DNA of 63,804 nt, counting the filler, from Octopus bimaculoides (lineage: Eukaryota): NCBI RefSeq assembly GCF_001194135.2. It is 5 parts of 4 records of this genome, joined end to end, with 100 filler letters (N's around TTAATTAATTAA, not from the genome) between each part and the next. Parts side by side here need not be neighbours in the genome. Positions count along the whole stretch, not along the records: positions 1 to 21,223 come from NC_068984.1; 4 more parts are not named here. One strand, written 5' to 3'. Numbering within the stretch: the first letter of the stretch is position 1; every line of letters starts with the position of its first letter. The notes under the pieces were generated by a model. That model was not told the DNA's origin and made no database searches. It was given only the letters and a program-made list of their open reading frames with translations. Positions 20,957-21,000 of the stretch are shown here, one piece after another. Both the position numbers and the translations under genes were made by a program.

Positions 20957-21000
20957 CTCACACTGAGGACGGATAACAATTAGAAACCTAGGTCTGTGGG
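20957..21000 (+). ncRNA. Minimal type I hammerhead ribozyme motif
   Basis: CTCACA-CTGAGGA-CGGATAACAATTA-GAAA-CCTAGG-TC-TGTGGG: 6-bp stem I, canonical core, palindromic stem III (ACCTAGGT), GUC cleavage site after 20994. Stem II is weak. Confidence 0.7.

What the first reader, a model, noticed from the sequence alone, without database searches (positions are those of the whole stretch)
20957..21000. Canonical-core hammerhead (GUC site) heading an unrecognised ~200-nt island right after a truncated mariner
Seen: CTCACA/TGTGGG stem I (6 bp), CTGAGGA and GAAA boxes, perfect palindrome ACCTAGGT, GUC triplet. Stem II (CGGATAACAATTA) pairs poorly, but three transitions (to TGGATAACAACCA) would restore a 3-bp stem. 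The surrounding 20905-21150 sequence is GC-richer and matches no other repeat in the window. Inference: a decayed retrozyme monomer or the self-cleaving 5' end of a retroelement.
Basis: partly seen in the sequence, partly recalled or inferred. Interest (0 to 1): 0.78.

Follow-up and report, generated by a model that had tools for sequence, protein, structure and literature searches.

The report
Probable dead hammerhead ribozyme relic
A 44-base stretch in an octopus-like genome has nearly all the letters of a self-cleaving hammerhead RNA of the kind carried by Penelope-like jumping genes, but one of its three stems is missing, so it is most likely a dead relic or a chance look-alike.

Summary
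There is a 6-bp helix I, CUGAGGA and GAAA boxes, the palindrome ACCUAGGU and a GUC site. The motif lies 43 nt after a mariner that breaks off sharply at 20913/20914.

Helix II is effectively absent: the spacer hairpin has 0.0 kcal/mol, and the hammerhead fold scores -0.6 against an MFE of -7.1 kcal/mol.

Simulation puts a stem-II-less match of this quality at about 1e-4 per window, or roughly 14 per 2.5-Gb genome.

A metagenome scan found the same core and helix III (GAAACCUAGGUC) in true hammerheads of coral Penelope-like elements (PLEs). These also occur as solo, 5'-truncated copies. Rfam misses those true ribozymes, so its silence on the candidate says little.

If C20970 is read as the extra nucleotide typical of PLE hammerheads, one substitution (A20982 to C) would restore G10.1-C11.1 and a weak 4-bp helix II.

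Best reading (about 0.5): an inactive relic of a PLE-type hammerhead. Chance is about 0.4 and an active ribozyme about 0.05.

No second copy, no PLE gene and no tandem repeat is visible. Copy number in the host could not be tested. Interest is low.

The parts
20180..20913 (+). 5' part of a mariner-type DNA transposon. It comprises the TA target site at 20180-20181, the terminal inverted repeat starting at 20182, and a frameshifted transposase N-terminus (residues 1 to about 142 of about 315). It is cut off sharply at 20913.
   Evidence: tblastn with P0007/P0009; blastn at 76% identity to L002 80-824 and L001; end of similarity at 20913. No similarity to the 3' half of the relatives downstream.
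20914..21170 (+). The 'island': non-mariner sequence between the mariner breakpoint and the (TA)n run. Its origin is unknown. Its first 100-140 nt could be a 5'-truncated 3' end of a Penelope-like element.
   Evidence: No copy elsewhere in the window. GC 46%. No PLE or mariner coding similarity. Fold z-scores -1.15 and -1.85. No relatives for two of its translated frames.
20957..20962 (+). Helix I, 5' strand (CUCACA).
   Evidence: Pairs with 20995-21000: 6 bp including one G.U. Only 2% of 93 chance matches sharing the same core had flanks pairing as well.
20963..20969 (+). Hammerhead core box C3-A9 (CUGAGGA, with N7 = G).
20970..20970 (+). C that can be read as the extra unpaired nucleotide between A9 and position 10.1.
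   Evidence: Sequence. The trait is described for PLE minimal hammerheads in PMC4209133. This is an interpretation, not a proof.
20971..20982 (+). Remnant of helix II: a G20971.A20982 mismatch at 10.1-11.1, then G20972.U20981, A20973-U20980 and U20974-A20979, with loop AACA (20975-20978).
   Evidence: The spacer hairpin has 0.0 kcal/mol, and the hammerhead fold in this register has -0.2 kcal/mol against an MFE of -7.1.
20983..20986 (+). Core box G12 A13 A14 plus A15.1 (GAAA).
20986..20993 (+). Helix III, the perfect palindrome ACCUAGGU. In a monomer it gives 2 bp plus a CUAG loop. Between two copies it gives an 8-bp helix.
   Evidence: The self-duplex has -11.4 kcal/mol. The same 8-mer occurs in true coral PLE hammerheads.
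20994..20994 (+). C17 of the GUC triplet. The predicted cleavage is 3' of it, between 20994 and 20995.
   Evidence: Cleavage itself was not tested.
20995..21000 (+). Helix I, 3' strand (UGUGGG).
21171..21223 (.). (TA)n microsatellite with two CTAT interruptions. It runs to the edge of the piece, so anything downstream is unseen.

Best explanation
The 44-nt motif is a dead relic of a type-I 'minimal' hammerhead ribozyme of the kind carried in the terminal repeats of Penelope-like retroelements (PLEs) and their non-autonomous derivatives.

In a live element, two such motifs on a multimeric transcript pair through the palindromic helix III to form a double hammerhead. Each motif then cuts 3' of C17, which trims the retroelement RNA to unit length.

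In this copy only a short, 5'-truncated 3'-terminal fragment of the element would survive, from about 20914 to somewhere between 21015 and 21050. It abuts a mariner broken at 20913.

Helix II has lost its G10.1-C11.1 pair and keeps only three weak pairs. There is also no partner copy. The RNA, if made, should therefore not cleave.

What is shown and what is inferred:
- Shown: the letters, the missing helix II, the rarity by chance, and the identity of core plus helix III with true PLE hammerheads.
- Inferred: descent from a PLE, the extent of the fragment, and inactivity.
For: 1. All 11 core positions, a 6-bp helix I, A15.1-U16.1 and C17 are present.
2. Chance gives only 1.2e-4 such sites per window.
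3. The pattern CTGANGA-N6-30-GAAACCTAGGTC recovered two families of bona fide hammerheads from metagenome contigs. They have helix I of 5-9 bp and helix II of 5-6 bp, and they lie next to RVT_1 and GIY-YIG ORFs whose closest relatives are Acropora, Porites and Montipora proteins. ACCUAGGU plus C17 is therefore a real PLE-hammerhead signature.
4. Among about 107 chance matches to the same pattern, none had a helix I of 5 or more pairs. Only 2% had flanks pairing as well as the candidate's.
5. Two of the four traits that Cervera and de la Pena list for PLE hammerheads are present: a nucleotide between A9 and 10.1, and palindromic 15.2-16.2/loop 3. A third, G10.1-C11.1, is one substitution away (PMC4209133).
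6. True PLE hammerheads are mostly solo copies from truncated elements (PMC4209133). In coral family A, copies L105 and L109 retain only about 10-60 nt upstream of the hammerhead. This is the same layout as the 43 nt between the 20913/20914 junction and helix I.
7. The host is octopod-like, with SINE-like repeats 80-87% identical to an Octopus sinensis locus. PLEs are an abundant TE order in Octopus (PMC13282606). The giant squid has 235 Rfam hammerhead-1 hits (PMC6962438).
Against: 1. No other copy of the island or of the motif could be shown. There is none in the window and none through protein-level proxies. No host genome was searchable.
2. There is no PLE RT or endonuclease anywhere in the window.
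3. Even the one-substitution repair gives a weak 4-bp helix II with a single G-C, whereas true PLE hammerheads have 5-8 bp (PMC4209133).
4. A simple insertion into the mariner would leave mariner sequence downstream, and none is seen. An extra deletion must therefore be assumed.
5. About 14 chance sites of this quality are expected per genome, and I do not know how many windows the first stage read.
6. The link to the coral families is partly post hoc, because the search pattern was taken from the candidate.
Confidence: 0.5

Rival explanations
1. Chance look-alike. The 31 constrained letters arose by accident in ordinary TE-rich, CA/TG-rich octopod DNA, and the sequence never was a ribozyme.
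For: Helix II is thermodynamically absent (0.0 kcal/mol), no better than any of 93 chance spacers. The hammerhead fold is not favoured (-0.6 against -7.1 kcal/mol), and the 58-nt region has z = +0.34. About 14 sites with the strict palindrome, and up to about 290 with a relaxed helix III, are expected per 2.5-Gb genome without any ribozyme ancestry. There is no second copy, no PLE gene and no tandem repeat. Helix I is made of CA/TG-type letters, which are over-represented in this window. The candidate-level helix II is reached by 14% of random spacers.
Against: Expectation is only 1.2e-4 per window. The helix III and cleavage-site 12-mer is identical to that of true PLE hammerheads. G sits at 10.1 after a single extra nucleotide, as in PLE hammerheads (PMC4209133). 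None of about 107 chance pattern matches had a helix I of 5 or more pairs.
Confidence: 0.4
2. Active ribozyme. It would be a functional hammerhead with an unorthodox helix II (bulged C, G.A at 10.1-11.1, three weak pairs). It would cleave as a dimer or with host factors, perhaps as part of an undescribed cephalopod retrozyme or PLE family whose next unit lies beyond the edge of the piece.
For: The core, helix I and the dimer-competent helix III are intact. Natural animal hammerheads with a mismatch at the base of helix II exist and still cleave, better as dimers (axolotl HHR_Amex2, PMC7229834). PLE minimal hammerheads cleave poorly in vitro even when intact (PMC4209133). The piece ends 228 nt after the cut site, so a tandem partner further on cannot be excluded.
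Against: G10.1-C11.1 is described as highly conserved (PMC4209133) and is absent here. There is no stable helix II. No partner hammerhead lies within 21 kb upstream or in the 228 nt downstream. Strong alternative folds exist. The island is not a structured, circle-like RNA.
Confidence: 0.05
3. Solo monomer of a non-LTR retrozyme: a 170-400-nt tandem-repeat element with a type-I hammerhead that moves through circular RNA. On this reading the island (20914-21170, 257 nt) is one decayed unit.
For: The island's length lies in the retrozyme range and its GC is below 50% (PMC7229834). The hammerhead is type I with a short palindromic helix III. Retrozymes are reported to derive from PLE terminal repeats (bioRxiv 10.64898/2026.07.22.740005).
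Against: There is no tandem arrangement in view. The island folds no better than shuffles. Invertebrate retrozyme hammerheads have stable helices II and cleave efficiently (PMC7229834). No family could be shown.
Confidence: 0.05

Closest known systems
Minimal type-I hammerheads in the terminal repeats (PLTRs) of metazoan Penelope-like elements (Cervera and de la Pena 2014, PMC4209133)
   Same: Full catalytic core. Open helix I of about 4-6 bp without a defined loop 1. An extra nucleotide between A9 and 10.1. A tiny palindromic helix III that implies action as a dimer. Mostly solo copies from truncated elements.
   Different: G10.1-C11.1 is replaced by G.A. Helix II has 3 weak pairs instead of 5-8 bp. 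No genome-wide family, no covariation and no PLE context has been shown for it.
Coral PLE hammerhead families A and B recovered here (for example L029 2183-2229 and L063 678-724)
   Same: Identical GAAACCUAGGUC (G12 to C17, including the 8-nt palindrome). The same CUGANGA box. Helix I of 5-9 bp directly flanking. Solo occurrence per contig. Some copies are 5'-truncated a few tens of nt upstream of the ribozyme.
   Different: The coral ribozymes have a clean 5-bp helix II closed by G-C and a 4-nt loop, no extra nucleotide after A9, U or C at N7, and adjacent RT or GIY-YIG ORFs. The flanks share no sequence similarity with the island.
Non-LTR retrozymes and amphibian satellite hammerheads (Cervera and de la Pena 2020, PMC7229834)
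   Same: Type-I topology and a weak palindromic helix III that needs a dimer. One axolotl family tolerates a mismatch at the base of helix II.
   Different: Those occur in tandem arrays of 170-400-bp units and are expressed as circular RNAs. Here there is a single motif, no array, and no sign of a structured unit.

Membership tests
Hammerhead ribozyme (any type) | Conserved core: C3 U4 G5 A6 N7 G8 A9, G12 A13 A14, the A15.1-U16.1 pair, and H17 at the cleavage site | tested here: met
   CUGAGGA 20963-20969, GAA 20983-20985, A20986-U20993, C20994.
Hammerhead ribozyme (any type) | Helix II closing the core, with the G10.1-C11.1 pair | tested here: not met
   C20970/A20982 in the direct register, or G20971.A20982 with C20970 bulged. 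There are 0 pairs from the base, and the spacer hairpin has 0.0 kcal/mol.
Hammerhead ribozyme (any type) | Helices I and III flanking the cleavage site | tested here: met
   Helix I has 6 bp. Helix III has 2 bp plus a CUAG loop as a monomer, or 8 bp as a dimer at -11.4 kcal/mol.
Hammerhead ribozyme (any type) | The hammerhead fold is energetically accessible | tested here: not met
   The hammerhead fold has -0.6 or -0.2 kcal/mol against an MFE of -7.1, and z = +0.34. The true coral hammerheads do adopt helices I and II in their MFE.
Hammerhead ribozyme (any type) | Match to a curated covariance model (the Rfam hammerhead families) | tested here: inconclusive
   No hit at the gathering threshold or at E<=10. 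The positive controls fail too. Coral family A is not found at E<=10, and family B gets only 17.5 bits against RAGATH-1-hammerhead.
Hammerhead ribozyme (any type) | Site-specific self-cleavage 3' of position 17 | not testable with these tools
   This needs in vitro transcription or RNA-end mapping.
PLE minimal hammerhead (PMC4209133) | [quoted passage not shown] | tested here: met
   C20970, if 10.1 is taken as G20971. The register is an interpretation.
PLE minimal hammerhead (PMC4209133) | Palindromic positions 15.2-16.2 and loop 3 | tested here: met
   ACCUAGGU is a perfect palindrome and is identical to that of the coral PLE hammerheads.
PLE minimal hammerhead (PMC4209133) | Genome-wide consensus families with covariation and compensatory changes | not testable with these tools
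   No cephalopod genome is searchable by DNA. Protein-level proxies found nothing. The PLE RT search returned only coral proteins.
PLE minimal hammerhead (PMC4209133) | Location in the terminal repeat of a PLE (RT plus GIY-YIG ORF) or in a truncated PLE | tested here: inconclusive
   No PLE RT or endonuclease similarity anywhere in the window. However, most true motifs are solo (PMC4209133), and the 43-nt upstream stub resembles the truncated coral copies.
Non-LTR retrozyme (PMC7229834) | Head-to-tail tandem repeats of about 170-400 bp, each with a type-I hammerhead | tested here: not met
   There is one motif only in 21 kb on both strands and no repeat of the island. The piece ends 228 nt downstream, so an array further on cannot be excluded.
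Non-LTR retrozyme (PMC7229834) | Expression as linear and circular RNA of unit length | not testable with these tools
   No transcript data were available.

The most novel reading that the evidence does not exclude
The motif is a working member of an undescribed cephalopod hammerhead family that tolerates a G.A pair at 10.1-11.1 and a three-pair helix II. It would cleave only as a double hammerhead, in trans or with a partner beyond the edge of the piece. It would belong to a new short non-autonomous PLE derivative that can land inside DNA transposons.
Probability: 0.05. Interest if true: 0.4.

Novelty: new member of a known kind. Interest (0 to 1): 0.15.

Why it matters
The finding matters little in itself. 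Hammerhead motifs in animal retroelements number in the thousands per genome and have been described since 2010-2014. A single decayed copy adds nothing new.

Two side results are more useful:
- The palindromic helix III ACCUAGGU followed by C17 recurs in true hammerheads of coral Penelope-like elements.
- Rfam 15 does not detect those true ribozymes even at E<=10. Rfam-based counts of hammerheads in invertebrate genomes, cephalopods included, are therefore likely to be large underestimates.

If the host genome turned out to hold a family of such motifs with an intact helix II, the locus would be a routine marker of an old PLE insertion next to a broken mariner.

Tried and rejected
1. The island as the 3' half of the same mariner. 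Rejected: there is no protein or DNA similarity to the C-terminal half or 3' end of relatives P0007, P0009, L001 and L002.

2. A degenerate 3' terminal inverted repeat inside the island, which would make 20182-21152 a deletion derivative with filler DNA. The best alignments of the reverse-complemented 5' end score no better than shuffles. This is not supported. A short ACCACGT followed by TA at 21145-21153 remains as a curiosity.

3. Rfam as a judge. Rejected after the positive controls failed.

4. Other copies through translated frames of the island:
- The + frame peptide shared no words with any protein.
- The - frame peptide hit only P0024 (E 6.8e-14 over 18 stretches). That protein is a tandem-repeat translation, and the single-unit match is 26 bits, so the hit is spurious.
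- An exact look-up of the mariner ORF found nothing on record.

5. Fetching an octopus PLE to read its hammerhead. The last protein search returned only coral proteins in its top 120. The one Octopus sinensis locus fetched (L123) holds no PLE and no hammerhead.

6. The island as a rod-like or circle-like structured RNA. The z-scores are -1.15 and -1.85, which is not remarkable.

7. A custom covariance model from the coral hammerheads. It was not built. There are only 7 distinct sequences in 2 families, and 18 of their letters equal the candidate by construction of the search, so the score would be circular. Helix I and helix II energies were compared with the 93 chance matches instead.

8. The supplements of the two key papers held no usable sequences.

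Full report
OBSERVATION

The sequence at 20957-21000 (+ strand) reads CTCACA | CTGAGGA | CGGATAACAATTA | GAAA | CCTAGGTC | TGTGGG. An explicit scanner for hammerhead architecture finds it as the only site in the 21-kb piece, on either strand, with a helix I of more than 4 pairs.
- Helix I has 6 bp, one of them G.U.
- Helix III is the perfect palindrome ACCUAGGU (20986-20993).
- The cleavage-site triplet is GUC, with the predicted cut between 20994 and 20995.
- Helix II has no pair counted from its base.

SURROUNDINGS

The piece is TE-rich, microsatellite-rich draft sequence with two N gaps. Several SINE-like repeats are 80-87% identical to an Octopus sinensis locus, so the host is an octopod or a close relative.

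Upstream lies a mariner-type element.
- The TA target site is at 20180-20181 and the inverted repeat starts at 20182.
- A frameshifted transposase N-terminus follows.
- The DNA is 76% identical to relatives L002 and L001.
- Similarity stops sharply at 20913/20914, at about transposase residue 142 of 315.

The following 257 nt, up to a (TA)n run that reaches the edge of the piece, show no similarity to several things:
- the 3' half of the mariner relatives;
- a 3' inverted repeat, beyond what shuffles give;
- anything else in the window;
- PLE reverse transcriptase or endonuclease.

The island's GC (46%) is above the window mean (36%) but equals that of the mariner part.

IS IT MORE THAN CHANCE?

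I used a first-order Markov model of the window, conditioned on the CTGANGA anchor. Two definitions of the motif were tested.
- Core + helix I >=6 + any helix III of >=3 pairs, with no demand on helix II: 0.0024 per window, about 290 per 2.5-Gb genome.
- The same with a perfectly Watson-Crick palindromic helix III of 6 or 8 nt: 1.2e-4 per window, about 14 per genome.

The weak helix II that can be drawn in the candidate is reached by 14% of random spacers, so it adds little. The motif is very unlikely in one window, but a few such accidents are expected in a whole genome of this size. I do not know how many windows the first stage read.

DOES IT FOLD AS A HAMMERHEAD?

It does not.
- The hammerhead conformation scores -0.6 kcal/mol (-0.2 in the alternative helix II register) against an MFE of -7.1 for the 44-mer.
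- The 58-nt region folds no better than shuffles (z +0.34).
- The 13-nt spacer has no stable hairpin at all (0.0 kcal/mol). That is no better than any of 93 chance spacers. True hammerheads with the same core score -2.2 to -3.8.
- Two copies can pair through helix III (the ACCUAGGU self-duplex has -11.4 kcal/mol), but there is only one copy in view.

RFAM

No family is matched at the gathering thresholds over the whole piece. No hammerhead family is matched at E<=10 in 20850-21180. I first took this as evidence against a ribozyme, but the controls say otherwise (see the next section).

RELATED SEQUENCES ELSEWHERE

A scan of metagenome contigs for CTGANGA-N6-30-GAAACCTAGGTC returned 120 stretches.
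- About 107 are plainly accidental, with helix I <=4 and no combination of helices.
- Thirteen belong to two families of textbook hammerheads.
- Family A: ...GGCCUAU CUGAUGA GCAUGCAGCCAUGC GAAACCUAGGUC AUGGGCC... (helix I 9 bp, helix II 5 bp).
- Family B: ...UAGCAA CUGACGA GAAUCGAAAGAUUC GAAACCUAGGUC UUGCUU... (helix I 5-6 bp, helix II 5 bp).

These sit next to ORFs with RVT_1 and GIY-YIG domains. The closest protein relatives are from Acropora, Porites and Montipora. They are therefore hammerheads of coral Penelope-like elements (PLEs).

Alignment of the copies shows three things:
- The ribozyme lies 15-50 nt from the 3' end of the repeated unit.
- It occurs once per contig, not in tandem.
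- Some copies (L105, L109) keep only 10-60 nt upstream of it.

Rfam does not find family A even at E<=10. It gives family B only 17.5 bits against RAGATH-1-hammerhead. The Rfam negative for the candidate is therefore uninformative.

WHAT THE LITERATURE SAYS DEFINES THIS KIND

Cervera and de la Pena 2014 (PMC4209133) describe the PLE 'minimal' hammerheads as follows:
- They are type I, with a tiny palindromic helix III or none.
- They have a poorly defined loop 1.
- They carry a conserved extra nucleotide between A9 and 10.1.
- They have a highly conserved G10.1-C11.1 pair.
- They form genome-wide families rich in covariation.
- They occur mostly as solo motifs from truncated PLEs.
- They cleave poorly in vitro, and only as dimers.

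Read in that register, the candidate has C20970 as the extra nucleotide. G20971 faces A20982 as a mismatch at 10.1-11.1. Then come G.U, A-U and U-A, with an AACA loop.

One substitution (A20982 to C) would restore the conserved pair and a 4-bp helix II. The restored helix would still be weak, and the hammerhead would still not be the MFE (-2.6 against -11.3 kcal/mol).

PLEs are an abundant TE order in Octopus, with an old expansion and 336 recent insertions (PMC13282606). The giant squid has 235 Rfam-detectable hammerheads (PMC6962438). Given the blind spot shown above, that count is a lower bound.

WEIGHING

For descent from a real ribozyme:
- The motif is rare by chance in one window.
- Its 12-mer G12-C17 is identical to that of true PLE hammerheads.
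- It has a good helix I, which none of about 107 accidental matches to the same pattern had.
- It has the extra nucleotide and a G at 10.1.
- It shows the solo, 5'-truncated layout behind a sharp junction.

Against:
- No family, PLE gene or partner copy has been shown.
- Helix II is weak even after repair.
- An additional deletion is needed to explain why no mariner sequence follows.
- The choice of the search pattern was post hoc.

A rough neutral-decay calculation (my inference) gives the following. About 1-2% of relics at 5-10% divergence would keep all 31 other constrained letters while losing helix II. With a few thousand PLE hammerhead copies per genome, such relics would outnumber the roughly 14 accidents several-fold. 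With a few hundred copies they would not.

I therefore assign:
- about 0.5 to 'inactive relic of a PLE-type hammerhead';
- about 0.4 to 'chance';
- about 0.05 to 'active ribozyme';
- about 0.05 to 'solo retrozyme monomer'. This last reading overlaps the first in ancestry, since animal retrozymes are reported to derive from PLE terminal repeats.

WHAT COULD NOT BE DONE

No cephalopod genome could be searched by DNA.
- The exact-protein look-up of the mariner ORF found nothing.
- Translated frames of the island found nothing real.
- The last protein search returned only coral PLEs.

The decisive test, copy number and covariation in the host genome, remains open.

VERDICT

This is a known kind of element, most likely dead or accidental, and interest is low.

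Noticed in passing
L029 2183-2229, L079 1319-1365, L063 678-724 (- strand), L042 32-78 and other loci: Bona fide hammerheads of coral Penelope-like elements have a full core, helix I of 5-9 bp and helix II of 5 bp. Rfam 15 does not detect them at gathering thresholds. At E<=10, family A is missed entirely and family B gets only 17.5 bits against RAGATH-1-hammerhead. Rfam-based hammerhead counts in invertebrate genomes are therefore likely underestimates.
   Followed up: yes
window 4384-4590 and 5143-5385, - strand: A second, unrelated mariner-type transposase remnant. It includes a C-terminal part (...PHLYSLDLVSSDYHLFRSLQ...). tblastn with P0007 gives E 0.003 and 0.097, and there is no Pfam hit at E<=0.01.
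   Followed up: partly
window 9662-9834, 9969-10111, 10421-10751, 7084-7221, 4962-5051, 13650-13724: SINE-like dispersed repeats that are 68-87% identical (the best matches 80-87%) to several places in an Octopus sinensis locus (L123, CM016879.1). This places the host among octopods or close relatives.
   Followed up: partly
window 2269-2331 and 5720-5782: Two 63-nt tRNA-like stretches (TGGCTTAGTGGTTAGAG...TTCGATTCC...) that are 73% identical to each other. They are probably heads of tRNA-derived SINEs. ARAGORN calls no tRNA in the window.
   Followed up: partly
window 19419-19594 and 19647-19822, related to 4952-5127 and 13669-13728: Two adjacent copies, 228 nt apart, of a 176-nt repeat family also present elsewhere in the window. 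They lie just upstream of the (CA)n run and the mariner.
   Followed up: no
window 8028-8427 and 10141-10294: Runs of 400 and 154 N. The piece comes from a gapped draft assembly, so repeat content near the gaps is incomplete.
   Followed up: yes
window 21145-21153: ACCACGT followed by TA matches the reverse complement of the first bases of the mariner's 5' inverted repeat plus a TA target site. The wider alignment is no better than shuffles, so a degenerate 3' end of a deletion derivative is neither shown nor excluded.
   Followed up: partly
window 20944-20962 with 21070-21088, and 21060-21079: An imperfect 19-nt inverted repeat (74% complementary) brackets the motif, and its left arm includes the 5' strand of helix I. 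It would compete with the hammerhead fold. A near-perfect small hairpin, GGACACA-GACTG-TGTGTCC, lies inside the island.
   Followed up: no
L110, + strand 1238 and - strand 21: One coral contig carries the family A hammerhead and, on the opposite strand about 0.8 kb away, a second hammerhead-like motif with helix III ACCGGU and a 7-bp helix II. This fits the 'dual motifs on opposite strands' described for PLEs.
   Followed up: no
P0024 (1236 aa): This protein is made of about 20 tandem units of about 52 residues and is evidently the translation of a DNA tandem repeat. Its E-value of 6.8e-14 against an island peptide comes from summing 18 weak stretches and is not homology.
   Followed up: yes
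L109 1079-1124, - strand: A histone 3' UTR stem-loop (Rfam RF00032, 34.3 bits, just above threshold) lies about 0.5 kb from a PLE hammerhead on a coral-type contig.
   Followed up: no
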